From assembly GCA_038496445.1 (NCBI GenBank), contig JALMLS010000341.1, forward strand, positions 1-64,000: a stretch of DNA of 64,000 nucleotides, in the 5' to 3' direction. Position numbers and translations under genes: made by a program. The notes under the pieces are model-generated. The model was not told the DNA's origin and did no database searches. It worked only from the letters and a program-made list of their open reading frames with translations. Below, in pieces: positions 26,540 through 63,587 of this stretch. The number at the start of each line of letters is the position of its first letter. Within the stretch, counting starts at the first letter, position 1. The DNA comes from Trichosphaerium sp. ATCC 40318 (lineage: Eukaryota > Protista > Tubulinea).

Positions 26540-27016
26540 ACTGTTTTAATACGCTAGAACCACCGAAACGAGCGACTTCAGTTGTTTTTACGCGATACCA
26601 CGCATCAATAGTGCGAACACACAACTTTTCAGCTACACGTTCTAGTATCGTTCTTTGATACAATAAAACGCTCAAAGCTAACATTTAACATGTTAAAGGT
26701 CGGTACAACAGCCTAAAATTTCGCGTACTTTTCATAGCGCTTTACAAACATAACATACCGTTACGGTTATTATTTATAACGCGTACCAGTGCGGTTTTTT
26801 TAACTTTGGGTGAAATTCAGGGTATTCTACAAAAACGTCTTGTACTACAAAAACTAACCGAAAGTTGTTCTAGAATAGTTTGGGCGTTATCAGTAAACCT
26901 CAGCGAGATTTCTTTTCGGCCTAAAGCCAGATTTTGGTCACCAAACCAGAAAAGTCTCATCCATTTCCAAGCAAAATAAAAACAGACACACACTGTACAT
27001 ACAAGAGAAGCAACAC

Positions 27017-28489
27017 ATGACATTCGTTATGGAATTATCAAGCGGTTGGGTGGACCAACTCCACAAAGGAGCAGCTGTAACACAACCAATTCTCCAGCTC
27101 ACAGAAGTTAAACAAATCGACTCTGTATCACGCTTTGCTTGTGTAGCAAGCGACGGTGTCAATTTTACCAAATTCTTGGTCCAACTCAACCAAGTGGTCG
27201 AACTTCGGCCTTTTGACGTTATAAAGGTAACGAACTACGCATTGAAACCCATTCTAGACGGAACTAAAAGGTACGGAGGCTAAAAAGTCCAAGTCAAAGC
27301 CGTTTTCGATAGCACACATTTCTTACCTACTCTCTTTAGGGTACTTATTGTTACATCGTTAATTGTTTTGGCTCGTTTGGACATCCTCATCGGAAACCCA
27401 ACACAAAGTGATTATTCATTCAAAACACCCACTGACTCAAAGTTCACGCTCAAACAACTCCTCTCAACTCCTCTCGGCGATGAACTCGCTGACGTTCAAA
27501 TTTCTATTGGCAGCGCTGTTTTTAGCGCTCACAAGGCTATACTGGCAGTACGTATACCGTACTTTCGAGGGTTATTCTCATCAGGCATGACGGATGCCGA
27601 AAAGGTACTGACACGCTATGCGTTACCGGTATCTTACAGTTCTACGCCTAAGGCTCAAGTAACTCTGTCACCACTCCACGTACCTGCTGGTGCTTTCCAG
27701 GTCATTCTAAAATACATCTACACCGACTCTTTGGACCTTCCAATCTGCAGAACCGGCTTAGAAGAATCCTTGCTATGGCAAACATACCTAGCAGCGGGAT
27801 TCTTATGCATAGAAGGACTCATCAAAGCGATTGAGGACTTTATAATCACAAAGATCCTAGACGTTTCTAATGTCTGTACGCTCTGGTGCTTAAGGTACAT
27901 ACAGTTCTTCATCATCAACGTTGCAAACAAGCCACATTGCTTTTCGCTAAGCGATTGTTTTGGCGCTTTTTTTTTCCTTTTTTCGAAACTTTTTTTGTTG
28001 CTTAATCACTCTGGCTTACCTTCTTTTCTTAGCTCTAGCATCAATGCTCAGAGATTGGCTTACCAATGCTTGGCTTTCTTAATAGCTAAGATGCCTCATA
28101 TCATAGACTCTAGCGAATTTCTTAACGCTCCACGGACTCTTCTTCAAGAATTGTTTCACAGGCTCCAAACATCTCAAATGTCGGAAGAAACAGCCCACCA
28201 TGTACGACGTGGTATGTTACAGTGGATTAGAGTGAATGAAGACCAAAGCCGAGTAGCAGACTTGTTGAAGCGATTAATCGTTTTCAGAGACGGTAGATCG
28301 TCGTCACCTTTGATTACAGCCACAAGCGGTTAGATAGGAAGATTGAGACGAAATGTAAATTTTTTTTGCATCTCTTCTTCTCTGACTTCGATGGACGACA
28401 AAGGAGTTGAGAGGAGAGGTTCAAGTTCTGGCTTTGTGGAAATTTTTCAAGCGCTTTACAAGGCCTTGTATATATGTATTACTAGTTAA
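27017..28489 (+). CDS. RPA70 N-terminal OB-fold (Rep-A_N)-BTB/BACK fusion protein; last exon uncertain
   Basis: LSSGWVDQL..QPILQLTEVK..RFACVASDG..FDVIKVTNY..RVLIVTSLIVL..IGNP spliced (intron ~27270-27339) to BTB ADVQISIGSAVFSAHKAILAVRIPYFRGLFSSGM..FQVILKYIYTD and a BACK-like region. Confidence 0.75.
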
Positions 28490-28953
28490 AAATTGTACAG
28501 GCACGTGTGACAGTAAAGAAAAAGTGTATTCTAGAATCTTATGTGTACAGTTGTATTATTTAATTCTTTTTGTTTGTTATCAAAAATCAATCAGTTGACA
28601 AAGACAGTTCAAAGACCTCGCTAGCTGAGCTTGGGGAACAAGCTGCGTTGGCATGGAATAGGTCACTTTGCATTCGCATAGCGCAAACGGTAGTAAACGA
28701 AAAGTATAGTAGAAAATGCAATGATTGATTTACTGGTAAAATATTGGTTTCTCGTGGTTGTTGTCGACTGTTTCACGGTGTATTTCCTGCATCTCAATGT
28801 GAACATCATTGAACACTATTAAACAAGCACAAAACGAGAATGGCATCCCAACTTTTTAGCCAAGAAAAAATTTCTTTTAACACTGCACGTGTTGGAGTTG
28901 GTGAGGTGTTTTTTATTTATCATTATATTTTTCACAATTTATATCTACAGAAA

Positions 28954-31010
28954 TTACAATCCTCTCGCTCTCTTTACCATCTTTTTGAAATGGAATGGTT
29001 TTACACCATTTTCATCCCAATCTTCTCTTTCCATGTCAAGAATATCTGCAATTTCTTCTAAACCGTACATCTCAAGTTTTGTAATGTACTGGCTTAACCT
29101 TATCTCAGCAAGGAACTCACGAAGTGTCATATCTTTGCTTAGATTAGCAGCCTTAGGCGGAGGAGATGATTTAGAAGCAGGTTTAGGTGGAGACGATTTT
29201 GACGCTGCTGATGGTTTTGCAGCTGATTTTTTAGAAGAAATAGGTTTTTCTTCAATAACTGGGGGTACTACTTCCTTTTTAGCTTTTGGCTTAGCTTGTC
29301 TTGCTGGCTTTGCTCGTTTCTTCTCATCTTCGTATGCGAAGACATCACCTTCATCCCATTTAGACTTTGCTGTCTCACTCTTTGGAGTAGAAGCCTTTGA
29401 AGCCTTAGAAGGCTTCGATGCTTCTTTTGCTTCCTTGGCAGCTTTAGCCTTTGCCTCTCTAGTAGCTTTTGCTTTCTCTGCACGTGCCTTAGCAGCTGCT
29501 GCTTTTGCATCAGCTTTTGCCTTTGCTTCAGCTGCCTTAGCTTCAGCTGCTTCCCTTGCAGCTTGTTCCTTTAGTTCTTTTTTAGTAGGTGGCTTTTTTC
29601 TTCCCTTTGCCGCTGGTTTTGTTTCTTCTTTTTTTTCAACGGCCTTAGCAGCTCCTCTCTTCTTTGTAGCCTTGACAGGTTCTTCTTCCTCTACTGGAGC
29701 AGCCTTTGCGCCTCTTTTTGATCTTGTAGGTGCTTTAGGTGCTGGTGGTTCGCTCTTGGATGCACTACGTGATGCTGGACTTCGTTTTATATTTTTTGGT
29801 TTGAAGACAATATCAAAATCTTCATCGTCTTCATCTTCTTCTTTAGGAATATTATCCAACTCATTTGGTGGCACTAAATGTTGACGTGCAGGCGTTTTTC
29901 CTTTTCTACCTGCTTTTGGAGCTTTTGGTGCAGGTGGAGGCGGTGGAGGAGGAGATGGCTTCTTTGGTGCTTTTTTTGTAGGTTTAACGACATTTCTTGG
30001 CTTAAATGATGGTTCTGGTGCCTCTTCTTTATCTTCCATCTCGCTCTTACGCAAACGTCTGTTAAAAGAAACCAAGTCTGGCTTATTATTCGATTTGTTT
30101 GATTTGAGCTTGCTACCGCCAAAGCTTAGCCCTTTGTTGGTTGCTGGAGGGTTGCTTCGCGCAGGTGAAGAGCGTGGGGCACCTGGAGGAAGCTTTTTAC
30201 CAGTTTTAGCATCATAAGAGTCGACTATTGAATCAAAATCATTATCCGTCATTTCAAGTACGTCGTCTGTCCCTGATGAGCTAACAGGAGTAACAGGATC
30301 AGCAGGGGGATCATTTCCGGTTATCCAGCTTGCCGGGCTAAAAGCTCCTTCTAGTTCAGAGCCAGGGAACTTGAACAGATTTTCTGCGGGTATTTCAGTT
30401 TCTTCTGCTACTACGTCGCCAGCAGGTGCTTTTGTAGCGGAAGCTAGGACAAAATAAGGTTGATGGAATTGTTTTAGGTTTTTTTTTACCGTTTAGCACA
30501 AAAGCTATGAGATCTGGTTTGCGCGTTTTGTTGCCACCATTAAAACCCATTTCTGTAGCTAAATTGCGTAGATTTTTTACCGTCATGTTTTGTAGGGTTC
30601 TATAGTTACTCATTAGTTGTTTAAAGCGAGTTGGAAGGTACACACGCTTCGTCGTAATTGTCATCATCAAAAACATCTTGGTCTTTAAGCGGAGCGTCAA
30701 ATGTATCATTATCGAGCGCTAATTACGTCAGCGCATTGCAAGGAGAGTTATATTCAAATTTTCGAAAAAATAAACCGCCAGTACCACTTGAAGTGTTGTC
30801 AATAACGTCCAAGAGTCCATCCATTCCCTTACTTTGTTTCGCATGTAATAATCGAACAGTTGAAAAATATCTTGCAGAGCGTCTAATCTGTACACCGCGC
30901 CTTGTATTCACTGCAGGACGCACACGTATAGATTTATGTTGTTTGCGCTCCTCATTGGTTCTGTATGAGCGAATCTGGGCAATACGAGGAGCTAACAAAC
31001 GAAGTGCCAT
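28954..31010 (-). CDS. Putative mitochondrial nucleic-acid-binding protein: presequence, Rho_N/SAP-like HEH motif, Lys/Ala/Pro-rich H1-like region, SAM domain
   Basis: Arg-rich N-terminus MALRLLAPRIAQIRSY; NMTVKNLRNLATEMGFNGGNKTRKPDLIAFV; C-terminal LREFLAEIRLSQYITKLEMYG..GVKPFHFKKM; three introns restore one frame. Confidence 0.7.
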
Positions 31011-38965: not shown

Positions 38966-40117
38966 CTAGTCTAGTAAAATGCGGCATAGAAGGCGGTGAC
39001 CTTGAATATATCTAAGCTCACCCAGGGTATCTTCATCATTCAATCTCTTTCCAATCGAAGGACTCACAACACTTAGTCCCATCTTCTGATACCCCATCGT
39101 ATGCTCCTCGAGTGGTTTATTGTAATAAACACGTAACTTTGATGGCGGAATACCTATTTTCATATAAAAAGCCTCCTTGACTTCCTCTATTGTACTGAAA
39201 TACGTGAACCCACGCAGAACTCTAAGTCCTTGGCTTGAATACATCCCAATAGTGACATCAATTTCTTTACCTTTAGAGACATCAAGAGAATACAAGCTAC
39301 GATTGACCTTGTCGTAAATGACATACACATCTGGGTTCTCGGAAACGCATATCTTGTCGATGTTTATGTCTGGCTCAAGGTACAACCAAACAAGGGTATT
39401 TTTGGTGTAGTCCAATACGCCAAGACCAGCATCACCGGCTCCAACCAAGACGTAAGAAGAATTTCGAGCTCGACACATTGTACAAGTTCCAGGGGCGATG
39501 AATGGTTGTACTCGCTTCTCGGTCATGTTGATTATAGCAAAGGAAGCGTTAGGAAGGCCAAGGACTGCCACATAGGTATCTTCACTTAGTACTAGGAATT
39601 CTTCGAAATCAAAAGGTACTTCGAAAGCAACACTTGTTTTTCCTCCTTCAACGTCAATCAGGGTTATCTTCTTCTCGTCTGTGTCACCAACAAACACTTT
39701 TCCGTTATCTGTTTGTACCAGTGTCTGGCTGTTGAAACAAGCCGACTCAGGAGTGCCAAAAGGTAGTGTAGAAACAGTCGCATCTTCGTTTTTGTCGGAA
39801 AATGAAATTTGACGAAAAGAGGTGTTCTTGGAATCCAAAACGTAGATGACATCTTTATCTTGATCGTAAACGAGGCCAGTAGGTTTACCAAAGCGTGCAG
39901 AGGTAGCTTCTCCGTCAGTTTTACCTTCGTCGGTTGGGTGACCCAATAGAGTTGTTTTAACGCCTTTGGCGTCTATCATTGTCACAGAGTTGTCGTTTGC
40001 GCAGGTGTAGATGATATTTTGTTTTCTGGACACCATACTTGATATTGAGGGTTTCTCATCATCTGTAAACGTGTATATTTTGTCTACAGTGTACATTAAA
40101 CCACCGTTGAAGCTCAT
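38966..40117 (-). CDS. Intronless NHL-like beta-propeller protein with a C-terminal ubiquitin-like domain
   Basis: DGEATSARFGKPTGLVYD..IYVLDSKNTSFRQI; C-terminal STIEEVKEAFYMKIGIPPSKLRVYY..LNDEDTLGEL. Confidence 0.75.
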   Translation of the reverse strand: MSFNGGLMYTVDKIYTFTDDEKPSISSMVSRKQNIIYTCANDNSVTMIDAKGVKTTLLGHPTDEGKTDGEATSARFGKPTGLVYDQDKDVIYVLDSKNTSFRQISFSDKNEDATVSTLPFGTPESACFNSQTLVQTDNGKVFVGDTDEKKITLIDVEGGKTSVAFEVPFDFEEFLVLSEDTYVAVLGLPNASFAIINMTEKRVQPFIAPGTCTMCRARNSSYVLVGAGDAGLGVLDYTKNTLVWLYLEPDINIDKICVSENPDVYVIYDKVNRSLYSLDVSKGKEIDVTIGMYSSQGLRVLRGFTYFSTIEEVKEAFYMKIGIPPSKLRVYYNKPLEEHTMGYQKMGLSVVSPSIGKRLNDEDTLGELRYIQGHRLLCRILLD

Positions 40118-51227: not shown

Positions 51228-52279
51228 ATGCACCATGTTTACCCTATTGCTCCCAAATGCACTGTACGTAATTTTAAACATAGTATCACTTTCCTGTTAA
51301 TACTAAATAGAAATGTACTGCAATACAAGAAGTTATATGCATACTGGACCTTCCAGTGGAGCTACAACTTGATATTATGGACTTAGACAATGAAGTATAT
51401 CTAATTTGGCCTCTGTTAGCATCAACAACGGCAACAGCAACAAGATTTGATTGTGATATGAACAAACATGGGAAATGGCAAAGAAAAAGTAGTACGACTG
51501 TACAACTTTTAAAGCAGGAGAATTGGAACCATGGTAAACGAAATGGAGAGTTTAAAGAGTGGAGAAAGAATGGTAATATATCTAAACAGTATCAATGTAT
51601 AGATGACAAAAGAGAAGGAGAGTACAAGTCATGGCACTATAATGGACAACTGAGTACTAAGAGTTACTATGTCAATGGTAAGCAAGAAGGAGATGAAAAA
51701 AAGTGGCGTCAGGATGGTCAATTGTTTAGGCAATATCAGTATGTTAATGGGAAACGACAAGGTTGTTTAAAATCATGGCATACTAATGGTCAATTGTCTT
51801 TGGAGTGTTACTATGTTGATGATAAGCAAGAAGGAGTTGAAAAGCAGTGGTATAATAGTGGTAGTATACGTGAGGAGTCACATTACGTTAATGATAATAA
51901 AGAAGGAGAATACAAGTTCTGGTATAGGAATAGTCAATTATGTATTCATTGTCATTTTGTTAATGATAAGAAAAAAGGACCGTATAAAGAGTGGAACAAA
52001 CTTGGTTTTTTGATAAAGCAATGTCATTACTACAATGATAAAATAGAAGGAGCGGTAGAGCATTGGCTTAATGGTAGATTATGGAAGCGATTTGAATATG
52101 TCAATGATAAAATGCATGGAGATTACAAGTGTTGGAATTCAAATAGCCAACTTATTGGCCAGTGTAATTATGTAAATGGCAAAATGCATGGAAAGTTTAA
52201 AGAGTGGCTTAGCAATGGCGAACTGCGACTTCACTACTTCGTTAATGGTAAACGAACACAAGAACAAAGCAACGATTAG
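51228..52279 (+). CDS. F-box-like motif + MORN-variant (YwqK-like) repeat protein
   Basis: Exon 1 MHHVYPIAPKCT, intron 51264-51310, then ILDLPVELQLDIMDLD and ~11 repeats of YVNGKxEGExKxWxxNGQL. Confidence 0.75.
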
Positions 52280-62100: not shown

Positions 62101-63587
62101 CTGCTGACATTGCCAAACGATATTCAACTTTACATATGCTCGCTCGATAAAGAAGTTTACATAAAATATCACCTACTGTCTACTGCAGCTGCTAAAAACA
62201 CTCACTTTACGAATGATTTTAGAAAAAAGGGTATCTGGAAGCGGTGGTATTCAACAGGAGAGTTAAAACGCATGATTCAACTACCTGTTGGCGAGATAAA
62301 ACAATGGTATAAAAACGGACAACTTCAGGCGCATTACTACCATATATACGGAAAGCATGCTTTAGCAGCTGCAGTATCAATTGTTCTATTTACAAGGCAA
62401 ACTTCATGGTGAGAGAAAGAAGTGGCACTCAAATGGGCAGATTGTTAAACAAAGCTTCTTTGAAAATGGAAAAAGGACAGGAAAGCATCAAGAGTGGCAC
62501 GAAAACGGACAGGTAGCACAAGGAATGCTGAAAAACGACAAGTATGAAGGAATACTCCAAAAGTGGTATGAAAATGGTAATATGAAAGCATATACAAGCG
62601 TCACAGATGGAATAAAAGAAGGTGAAATGAAAGAGTGGTATGAAAATGGCAAACTAAAGATACACTACTTTCGTCAATGCAAAAAAGTGGCGAGGTTTGA
62701 AGAATATTTTGAGAATGGAAACCTTAAATCTTGTTTGTTCTTCGAAGATAGCACAGATGACTTCTATAACCAAGAGATGATCAAAGAAGGTAACATTAAA
62801 ACTATTAATGGCAAACAATGTCTAAAAGAAACGCACTACCACGAAAATGGAACAAGAAAATTAGAAAAATTCTGTTGCAATGGTAAGCCTTACGGCACTG
62901 CAAAACAGTGGAATGAAGATGGCCAAATTACATCTTGTGTTGAGGTAAAGAATGGCATACCGTATGGCAAGAGTGTCATGTACAAAGATGGATTAATAAG
63001 ATAAAAAGCGCTATGTTTAAGAACGGAAAGAAGAATGGTAAATACAAGGAGTGGCATGAAAATACTCAACTTGCGTTGCGTATTATATTGATGATGTGAT
63101 GGAAGGACTAGTGGAAAAATGGTATGAAAATGGACAAATGAAACAGGTTTATACGATTCACAATGGCAAAAAAGAAGGAGAACGTAATGCTGGTACAGTA
63201 ATGGACAGTTATCATCAACGATTTTGGAAACACGGCTTAGAACATGGAGAATGTAGACAATGGTATGAAAATGGTAAACTACAAGTACGGTATGAAGCAA
63301 AGAATGGTAAAACGGCAGGAAAGTATGAAGAGTTCTACGACAATGGACAACTACGCAAGCGCTTCTACAAATGGGATGATAAAGTACAAGGCGAAGTAAA
63401 ACGTTGGCACAGGAATGGACAGTTGTATTTACAGTTTTATGTAAAAGGCAGTATTCCTCATGGAGAAGAAAAAGAGTGGCATCCCAATGAACAAATGAGA
63501 CGATGTTTGACTCGTGTCAATGGAGAAGCTGAAGTTTACTTAGGATGTGTGGTCAAATTTACGTTAAGAATGTATTCTACTTCATGA
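62101..63587 (+). pseudogene. F-box-like + MORN-variant repeat gene disrupted by several frameshifts
   Basis: LLTLPNDIQLYICSLDKEVY (paralogous to 51228-52279); repeat frame switches near 62365, 63002, 63080, 63187 and 63215. Confidence 0.7.

What the first reader, a model, noticed from the sequence alone, without database searches (positions are those of the whole stretch)
27017..28489. RPA70N-BTB/BACK fusion: a candidate Cullin-3 adaptor for DNA-damage proteins
Seen: an N-terminal ~110 aa with RPA1 N-domain hallmarks (PILQL, SDG, IGNP) spliced in frame to BTB-BACK. Known: RPA70N is a protein-interaction OB fold that binds acidic motifs of ATRIP, RAD9, MRE11 and p53, and BTB-BACK recruits CUL3. 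Inference: an RPA mimic that ubiquitinates checkpoint factors. I do not recognise this architecture.
Basis: partly seen in the sequence, partly recalled or inferred. Interest (0 to 1): 0.7.

Follow-up and report, generated by a model that had tools for sequence, protein, structure and literature searches.

The report
RPA-docking domain on a BTB adaptor
An amoeba gene really does make one spliced mRNA for a 353-residue protein that puts a copy of replication protein A's partner-docking domain in front of a BTB-BACK module of the kind that recruits the Cullin-3 ubiquitin ligase. It belongs to a small, undescribed protist family whose function is still only inferred.

Summary
The gene (+ strand, ATG 27017, stop 28331-28333) has four exons. 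Exon 1 alone passes Pfam's Rep-A_N cut-off (33.8 vs 26.7 bits). Exons 2-3 are BTB and exon 4 is BACK. Single spliced cDNA contigs from two studies cover all exons, and a third study confirms two of the junctions, so the fusion is real at the RNA level.

The architecture is not unique. I found at least eight unnamed Rep-A_N+BTB+BACK proteins, plus one below Pfam's Rep-A_N cut-off, in soil metatranscriptomes and public RNA runs. The longest also end in an RPA32-type winged helix, RPA's second docking module. None comes from NCBI or UniRef, and I found no paper on it. This scan had already noted a 414-residue paralogue on other DNA of this genome; its note said "nowhere else", which my searches contradict.

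The family's BTB-BACK profile matches CUL3 adaptors best (KBTBD2, SPOP, KEAP1, KLHL3). The likeliest reading is a SPOP-style CUL3 substrate adaptor that reads RPA-docking motifs. The window copy is the degenerate short form: a near-neutral N-domain, two of five cleft basic residues lost, M-T-D in place of the phi-x-E motif, and no winged helix. Function is untested.

The parts
26985..27016 (+). 5' UTR (minimum extent)
   Evidence: cDNA contig of run X3 starts at 26985. ATG 27017 is the first start codon after an upstream stop and aligns with Met1 of the family members.
27017..27270 (+). Exon 1 (CDS, 84 codons plus 2 bases): most of the RPA70N-like OB domain
   Evidence: Pfam Rep-A_N 33.8 bits, above the 26.7 cut-off, E 3.5e-8. 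ESM Atlas nearest clusters are Rep-A_N, 0.94. An AF2 model of this exon alone aligns 70-72 residues to human RPA70N at rmsd 2.7-3.2, Z 5.0-5.4. That is not discriminating.
27271..27339 (+). Intron 1, 69 bases, GT..AG, phase 2
   Evidence: Skipped in cDNA contigs of X1, X3 and X6 (table 5). It contains an in-frame stop.
27340..27604 (+). Exon 2: last strand of the OB domain with the ILIGNP motif (27340-27400), a linker, and the first half of BTB (about 27479-27598) including the M-T-D variant of the phi-x-E motif
   Evidence: Pfam BTB 33.2 bits on this exon alone. It aligns colinearly with the family.
27605..27652 (+).
   Evidence: Skipped in the X1 and X3 contigs. Splice sites were checked.
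27653..27894 (+). Exon 3: second half of BTB (about 27665-27853) and the start of BACK
   Evidence: Pfam BTB 22.7 bits on this exon alone, model positions 54-109.
27895..28032 (+). Intron 3, 138 bases, GT..AG, phase 2. It is open in frame, so it reads through as an ORF.
   Evidence: Skipped in the X1, X3 and X6 contigs.
28033..28333 (+). Exon 4 coding part: BACK domain (about 28040-28270) and stop TAG 28331-28333. No RPA_C winged helix.
   Evidence: Pfam BACK 23.2 bits, above the 20.9 cut-off.
28334..28553 (+). 3' UTR (minimum extent)
   Evidence: cDNA contigs run unspliced to 28536 (X1) and 28553 (X2).

Best explanation
The gene encodes a 353-residue, SPOP-style substrate adaptor for a Cullin-3 RING ligase. 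The substrate-binding position N-terminal to the BTB-BACK is filled by a diverged copy of RPA70N, the protein-docking OB domain of replication protein A, where SPOP carries MATH.

Shown:
- The four-exon structure and a single mRNA.
- The three Pfam domains.
- Membership of a conserved protist family with the same layout. Its longer members add an RPA32C-type winged helix at the C-terminus.

Inferred:
- The BTB-BACK dimerises and binds the N-terminal domain of CUL3.
- The RPA70N-like domain (and, in long members, the winged helix) catches the short acidic or amphipathic motifs by which repair and checkpoint proteins normally dock on RPA, or the phosphorylated RPA32 N-terminus. Those proteins would then be ubiquitinated away from single-stranded DNA.

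The window copy is a divergent short paralogue. Its cleft is less basic and its CUL3 motif is altered, so its specificity or its CUL3 affinity may have drifted.
For: One transcript: contigs X1 (1256 nt) and X3 (1128 nt) each lie on 27026/26985-27268, 27338-27601, 27650-27892 and 28031 onward. They show three GT..AG joints. X6 confirms joints 1 and 3. That is three studies.

Domains: Rep-A_N, BTB and BACK all score above Pfam cut-offs.

Family:
- P0069, P0100, P0101, P0102, P0103, P0104, P0107 and P0018 have Rep-A_N (41-70 bits) plus BTB. BACK is above cut-off in seven of them and only 15 bits in P0018.
- RPA_C is above cut-off in P0069 and P0100.
- The window exons align colinearly with these proteins and share the N-terminal start motif.
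- The N-domain profile, which includes the window pieces, hits human RPA70N at E 5e-18 over residues 5-118.
- The C-terminal profile gives RPA32C as its six best PDB hits, E 4e-4.

BTB-BACK type: the best solved relatives are all CUL3 adaptors: KBTBD2 8e-31, SPOP 4e-25, KEAP1, KLHL3, KBTBD4 and KLHL11. The family keeps M-K/R-E at the phi-x-E position (motif defined in PMC3616122).

Three cleft positions in the window copy stay basic: K for R31, R41 kept, and K for R91.
Against: No binding or ubiquitination data exist for any member.

In the window copy:
- R43 becomes A and K88 becomes L.
- The N-domain is near neutral.
- The conserved Glu of phi-x-E is Asp. In KLHL3, E85A abolishes CUL3 binding; the effect of Asp is unknown.
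- BACK scores only just above cut-off.

The complete N-domain of the window protein could not be modelled, because the joined sequence was not to be submitted. The exon-1-only model gave only non-significant fold matches (Foldseek E at least 0.07, VIA Z 5.4).
Confidence: 0.5

Rival explanations
1. CUL3 adaptor with a re-purposed OB domain. The BTB-BACK does recruit CUL3, but the RPA70N-derived domain of this copy has drifted to bind ligands unrelated to RPA partners. It would be one more product of lineage-specific shuffling of BTB adaptors.
For: The window N-domain is near neutral and has lost R43 and K88. It shares only 18-34 % identity with the family N-domains. Earlier scan notes, untested here, report other BTB fusions in this genome.
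Against: The fold-defining and several cleft positions are kept, including LQ, SDG and IGNP. The association of 70N with 32C in the long relatives argues that the ancestral function concerned RPA partners.
Confidence: 0.25
2. Non-degradative dimeric decoy or scaffold. The BTB serves only to dimerise, and the protein competes with RPA for its partners, or bridges them, without CUL3.
For: The phi-x-E motif is altered to M-T-D. BACK is weak at 23.2 bits. Many BTB proteins are not CUL3 adaptors (general knowledge).
Against: The family profile scores far better with CUL3-adaptor BTB-BACKs (E 1e-31 to 1e-19) than with transcription-factor BTBs. A BACK/3-box region is present. Relatives keep M-K/R-E.
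Confidence: 0.15
3. Young, functionless chimera or annotation artefact.
For: No close orthologue exists in 1.84 billion representative proteins: the best hit is 74 bits and none is below 1e-30.
Against: The frame stays open across four exons and the gene is expressed in three studies. The only coding variant seen is synonymous. The same layout is conserved at 25-55 % identity in at least eight other proteins from different samples.
Confidence: 0.05

Closest known systems
SPOP / MATH-BTB (BPM) CUL3 adaptors
   Same: Size is similar (353 vs 374 aa). The order is the same: an N-terminal substrate-binding domain, a linker, BTB, then a short BACK/3-box. SPOP is among the best solved matches of the family's BTB-BACK profile (E 4e-25).
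   Different: The N-terminal domain is an RPA70N-type OB fold, not MATH. No BACK_BPM_SPOP signature was found. The motif reads M-T-D rather than M-E-E.
RPA70 (RPA1) N-terminal domain, DBD-F
   Same: Pfam Rep-A_N is above cut-off. The family profile matches human RPA70N over the whole domain (E 5e-18). R31, R41 and R91 equivalents stay basic.
   Different: No DBD-A, B or C follows, so it is not an RPA subunit. R43 and K88 are lost, there is one extra residue in the L45 loop, and the charge is near neutral.
KLHL / KBTBD BTB-BACK-Kelch adaptors
   Same: BTB-BACK of the same type. KBTBD2 is the best solved relative (8e-31), followed by KLHL3, KLHL11 and KLHL22.
   Different: There is no Kelch propeller. 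The recognition domain is N-terminal, and in long relatives there is also a C-terminal winged helix.
RFWD3 and PRP19 (E3 ligases acting at RPA)
   Same: They link ubiquitination to the RPA interaction network (general knowledge; review PMC6213728 listed).
   Different: Those ligases bind RPA itself. Here, copies of RPA's own docking modules are built into the adaptor.

Membership tests
Pfam Rep-A_N (RPA70N, PF04057) | Profile match above the curated gathering score | tested here: met
   33.8 bits against 26.7, on exon 1 alone, which lacks the last strand.
Pfam Rep-A_N (RPA70N, PF04057) | Five-stranded OB barrel superposable on solved RPA70N | tested here: inconclusive
   Only exon 1 could be modelled (pLDDT 77). 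It aligns 70-72 residues to 2B29 and related entries at rmsd 2.7-3.2, Z 5.0-5.4, tied with other small barrels. Foldseek E was at least 0.07. The joined domain was not folded.
Pfam Rep-A_N (RPA70N, PF04057) | Basic cleft residues R31, R41, R43, K88 and R91 of human RPA70N | tested here: inconclusive
   By alignment the window has K, R, A, L and K (with R next to it). Three of five are kept. Net charge is about zero.
RPA1 orthologue (RPA large subunit) | DNA-binding OB folds DBD-A, DBD-B and DBD-C after the N-domain | tested here: not met
   The rest of the protein is BTB and BACK. No tRNA_anti-codon, REPA_OB_2 or Rep_fac-A_C hits were found.
CUL3 BTB-BACK substrate adaptors | BTB domain with N-terminal alpha1 extension | tested here: met
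   BTB scores 55 bits. The alignment to KLHL26 starts before the core.
CUL3 BTB-BACK substrate adaptors | BACK / 3-box region after the BTB | tested here: met
   BACK scores 23.2 bits against 20.9. The family profile aligns through BACK with KBTBD2, KLHL3 and KLHL11.
CUL3 BTB-BACK substrate adaptors | phi-x-E motif in alpha3.1 (M83-S84-E85 in KLHL3) | tested here: inconclusive
   The window has M-T-D and relatives have M-K/R-E. The motif and the effect of E85A are taken from PMC3616122.
CUL3 BTB-BACK substrate adaptors | Physical binding to the CUL3 N-terminal domain | not testable with these tools
   Needs a binding assay or a complex model with this organism's CUL3.
SPOP / MATH-BTB | MATH domain N-terminal to the BTB | tested here: not met
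   No MATH hit. The N-domain is Rep-A_N.
Undescribed RPA70N-BTB-BACK protist family (this report) | Colinear Rep-A_N + BTB + BACK with the shared start motif (M-x-F-x-L-x-L-x-x-G) and the LQ, SDG and I/LG-x-P motifs | tested here: met
   Alignments A2 and A4. Exon 1 against P0069: BLASTP E 2e-6.
Undescribed RPA70N-BTB-BACK protist family (this report) | C-terminal RPA32C-type winged helix (long members only) | tested here: not met
   The window CDS ends after BACK. There is no RPA_C hit on exon 4, and the cDNA is unspliced through the stop.

The most novel reading that the evidence does not exclude
A conserved protist ubiquitin-ligase adaptor family carries both protein-recruitment modules of RPA (70N and 32C) on a CUL3-binding BTB-BACK. 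It would read the same docking motifs as RPA and so control the abundance of the whole set of RPA-binding repair and checkpoint factors, or of phospho-RPA itself, independently of single-stranded DNA. The window gene and its 414-residue paralogue would be diverged members in one amoeba.
Probability: 0.3. Interest if true: 0.75.

Novelty: new variant of a known kind. Interest (0 to 1): 0.55.

Why it matters
BTB-BACK adaptors are well known, and so is RPA70N. What is new is finding RPA's docking domain re-used as the recognition module of a ubiquitin-ligase adaptor, conserved across several uncultured protists. In the long forms it is paired with RPA's second docking module.

If the inference holds, this is a natural "RPA-interactome receptor". 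It would show that the short RPA-binding motifs of repair proteins can double as degrons. It would also give a compact tool for capturing RPA partners.

For annotation, it defines a family that currently has no name and no member in curated databases.

Tried and rejected
1. Word search with the read-through ORF 27341-28330: no hit at E 1e-3 or better. The protein of this genome is not in that collection.
2. Exhaustive phmmer with the same ORF: only 99 weak hits. It became useful only after I re-screened the hits with exon 1.
3. phmmer of exon 1 against PDB: RPA70N comes first, but at E 0.1. Significance came only from the family profile.
4. AF2 of exon 1 alone, then Foldseek and VIA: RPA70N-rich lists but not significant.
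5. AF2 of the C-terminal tail of P0100: a generic winged helix with no specific RPA32C match by fold.
6. ESM Atlas with P0100: nothing usable.
7. BTB-only hits on long ENA contigs (P0105, P0113): checked for an upstream Rep-A_N exon and none was found. They are ordinary BTB genes.
8. Paralogues inside the window: none.
9. Paper searches for the run and sample accessions, and for RPA70N/Rep-A_N with BTB: nothing relevant.
10. Not done, by instruction: joining the four exons into one protein for Pfam, homology search or folding. The basic cleft of the window protein was therefore judged by alignment only.

Full report
**What is there**

The window is eukaryotic, with about 38 % G+C and very short introns. 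On the + strand an ATG at 27017 opens an 84-codon stretch. It ends at a GT donor (27271) just before an in-frame stop.

Laying public contigs on 26700-28700 gave the gene structure directly. One 1256-nt contig of run X1 and one 1128-nt contig of run X3 come from different studies (2015 and 2023). Each lies on 27026 (or 26985)-27268, 27338-27601, 27650-27892 and 28031 onward. They skip three GT..AG intervals of 69, 48 and 138 bases. Run X6, from a third study, shows the first and third joints.

After placing the cuts on GT..AG:
- Exons are 27017-27270, 27340-27604, 27653-27894 and 28033-28333.
- Introns are 27271-27339, 27605-27652 and 27895-28032.
- The stop is TAG at 28331-28333.
- The product is 353 residues.

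The refuting condition "the exons belong to separate transcripts" is therefore not met.

**Domains, exon by exon**

Every search used one exon, or the naturally open read-through 27341-28330, by reference.

- Exon 1 alone matches Pfam Rep-A_N above the curated cut-off (33.8 against 26.7 bits, E 3.5e-8).
- 27341-27892 matches BTB at 55 bits.
- Exon 4 matches BACK at 23.2 against 20.9 bits.
- With the 48-base intron removed, both halves of the BTB still score on their own.
- The ESM Atlas places exon 1 among Rep-A_N clusters.
- Against PDB sequences, exon 1 ranks human RPA70N first, but only at E 0.1.

**Relatives**

The word search with the read-through ORF found nothing. The exhaustive search of 1.84 billion representatives gave 99 weak BTB hits and no close orthologue.

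Screening those hits with exon 1 and then with Pfam gave three proteins:
- P0069: Rep-A_N 65.6 bits, BTB, BACK and RPA_C.
- P0018: Rep-A_N 40.9 bits and BTB.
- P0009: Rep-A_N 22.1 bits (sub-threshold), BTB and BACK.

Profile searches seeded with these added P0100, P0101, P0102, P0103, P0104 and P0107, plus N-terminally truncated fragments.

All members come from JGI metatranscriptomes or Logan assemblies of RNA-like contigs of 1-2.4 kb. None carries a name, and none comes from NCBI or UniRef.

The four window exons align colinearly with these proteins. They share the start motif, LQ, SDG, the I/LG-x-P end of the OB domain, AHK..L..R..YFR, IY.D and VC..W.

A profile of the N-domains, including the two window pieces, matches human RPA70N over residues 5-118 at E 5e-18, and yeast Rfa1N at 2e-4.

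The architecture is therefore real and conserved, but it is not unique to this genome. My searches contradict that last point.

**A second RPA module in the long relatives**

P0069 and P0100 pass Pfam's RPA_C cut-off, and P0101 and P0102 fall just below it. A profile of the four C-terminal tails gives RPA32 C-terminal domains as its six best PDB hits (E 4e-4). The AF2 model of the tail is a winged helix, but by fold it is not specifically RPA32C.

The family thus gathers the two protein-docking modules of RPA and none of its DNA-binding OB folds.

The window protein lacks this tail. Its CDS stops after BACK, and the cDNA is unspliced through the stop.

**How it probably works**

The family BTB-BACK profile scores best with solved CUL3 adaptors: KBTBD2 8e-31, SPOP 4e-25, then KEAP1, KLHL3, KBTBD4, KLHL11, KLHL22 and gigaxonin. 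Transcription-factor BTBs score well below them.

The CUL3-contacting phi-x-E motif is M83-S84-E85 in KLHL3, and E85A abolishes binding there (PMC3616122). It is M-K/R-E in the relatives and M-T-D in the window protein.

The layout copies SPOP: a recognition domain, a linker, BTB, then a short BACK.

I therefore read the protein as a SPOP-style CUL3 substrate adaptor whose recognition module is RPA70N-like. That it binds CUL3, and that it recognises the acidic docking motifs of RPA partners or phospho-RPA32, are inferences.

The window copy shows signs of drift:
- By alignment to human RPA70N, R31 becomes K and R41 stays R.
- R43 becomes A and K88 becomes L.
- R91 and R92 become K and R, with one extra residue in the loop.
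- The N-domain is near neutral (pI 6.5), whereas most relatives are basic (8.7-9.7; P0018 is 6.9).

The AF2 model of exon 1 alone has pLDDT 77. It superposes 70-72 residues on RPA70N at rmsd 2.7-3.2, but only at Z 5.0-5.4, tied with other small barrels. The cleft itself could not be modelled without the joined sequence.

**Organism**

Earlier notes of this scan name the marine amoeba Trichosphaerium. The published draft genome has 37.69 % G+C and a mean intron of 75 bases (PMC10521059). That fits the window, but I did not test the assignment otherwise.

**Novelty and verdict**

No paper in the searchable library links RPA70N or Rep-A_N with BTB.

It is a known kind of machine, a BTB-BACK adaptor, with a recognition module not described before. 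It is conserved in a small unnamed family. I class it as a new variant of a known kind and give it moderate interest. The window gene itself is the short, more degenerate member, and nothing about function has been tested.

Noticed in passing
P0069, P0100 (loci L001, L004, L005); weaker in P0101, P0102 (L006, L007): Longer relatives of the window protein end in an RPA32C-type winged helix. Both protein-docking modules of RPA therefore flank one BTB-BACK. The window copy lacks this tail.
   Followed up: yes
window 27605-27652: A 48-base phase-0 intron sits inside the BTB. All three donors of the gene read AAG|GTAC.
   Followed up: yes
window 28331, 27409, 28359, 28387: Strain or allele differences appear in runs X2 and X6. 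AGA is inserted behind 28331, which keeps a TAG stop. There is one synonymous T>C at 27409 and two 3' UTR changes. No non-synonymous change was seen.
   Followed up: partly
window 27011-27372 (run X2 contig): One contig keeps intron 1. It is either unspliced RNA or DNA in a run guessed to be RNA.
   Followed up: no
window 28954-30252 (-): An intronless 432-residue Lys/Ala/Pro/Glu-rich ORF converges on the gene's 3' end. It ends in a SAM domain at 22.8 bits, just under the cut-off of 23.
   Followed up: partly
window 38969-40117 (-): An ORF with NHL/beta-propeller-like repeats and a ubiquitin-like stretch. All matches are weak.
   Followed up: no
window 51356-52276 and 62381-63001 (+): Two ORFs full of MORN_2 repeats, at 73 and 81 bits.
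   Followed up: no
same genome, other pieces (earlier notes s1-383776, s1-372583, s1-390506): Earlier notes report an F-box/LRR adaptor fused to an RPA70 C-terminal OB fold, an RPA-type OB fused to a dead caspase domain, and a G-alpha-BTB fusion. RPA-derived modules and E3 adaptors may be shuffled repeatedly in this lineage. I could not read those pieces.
   Followed up: no
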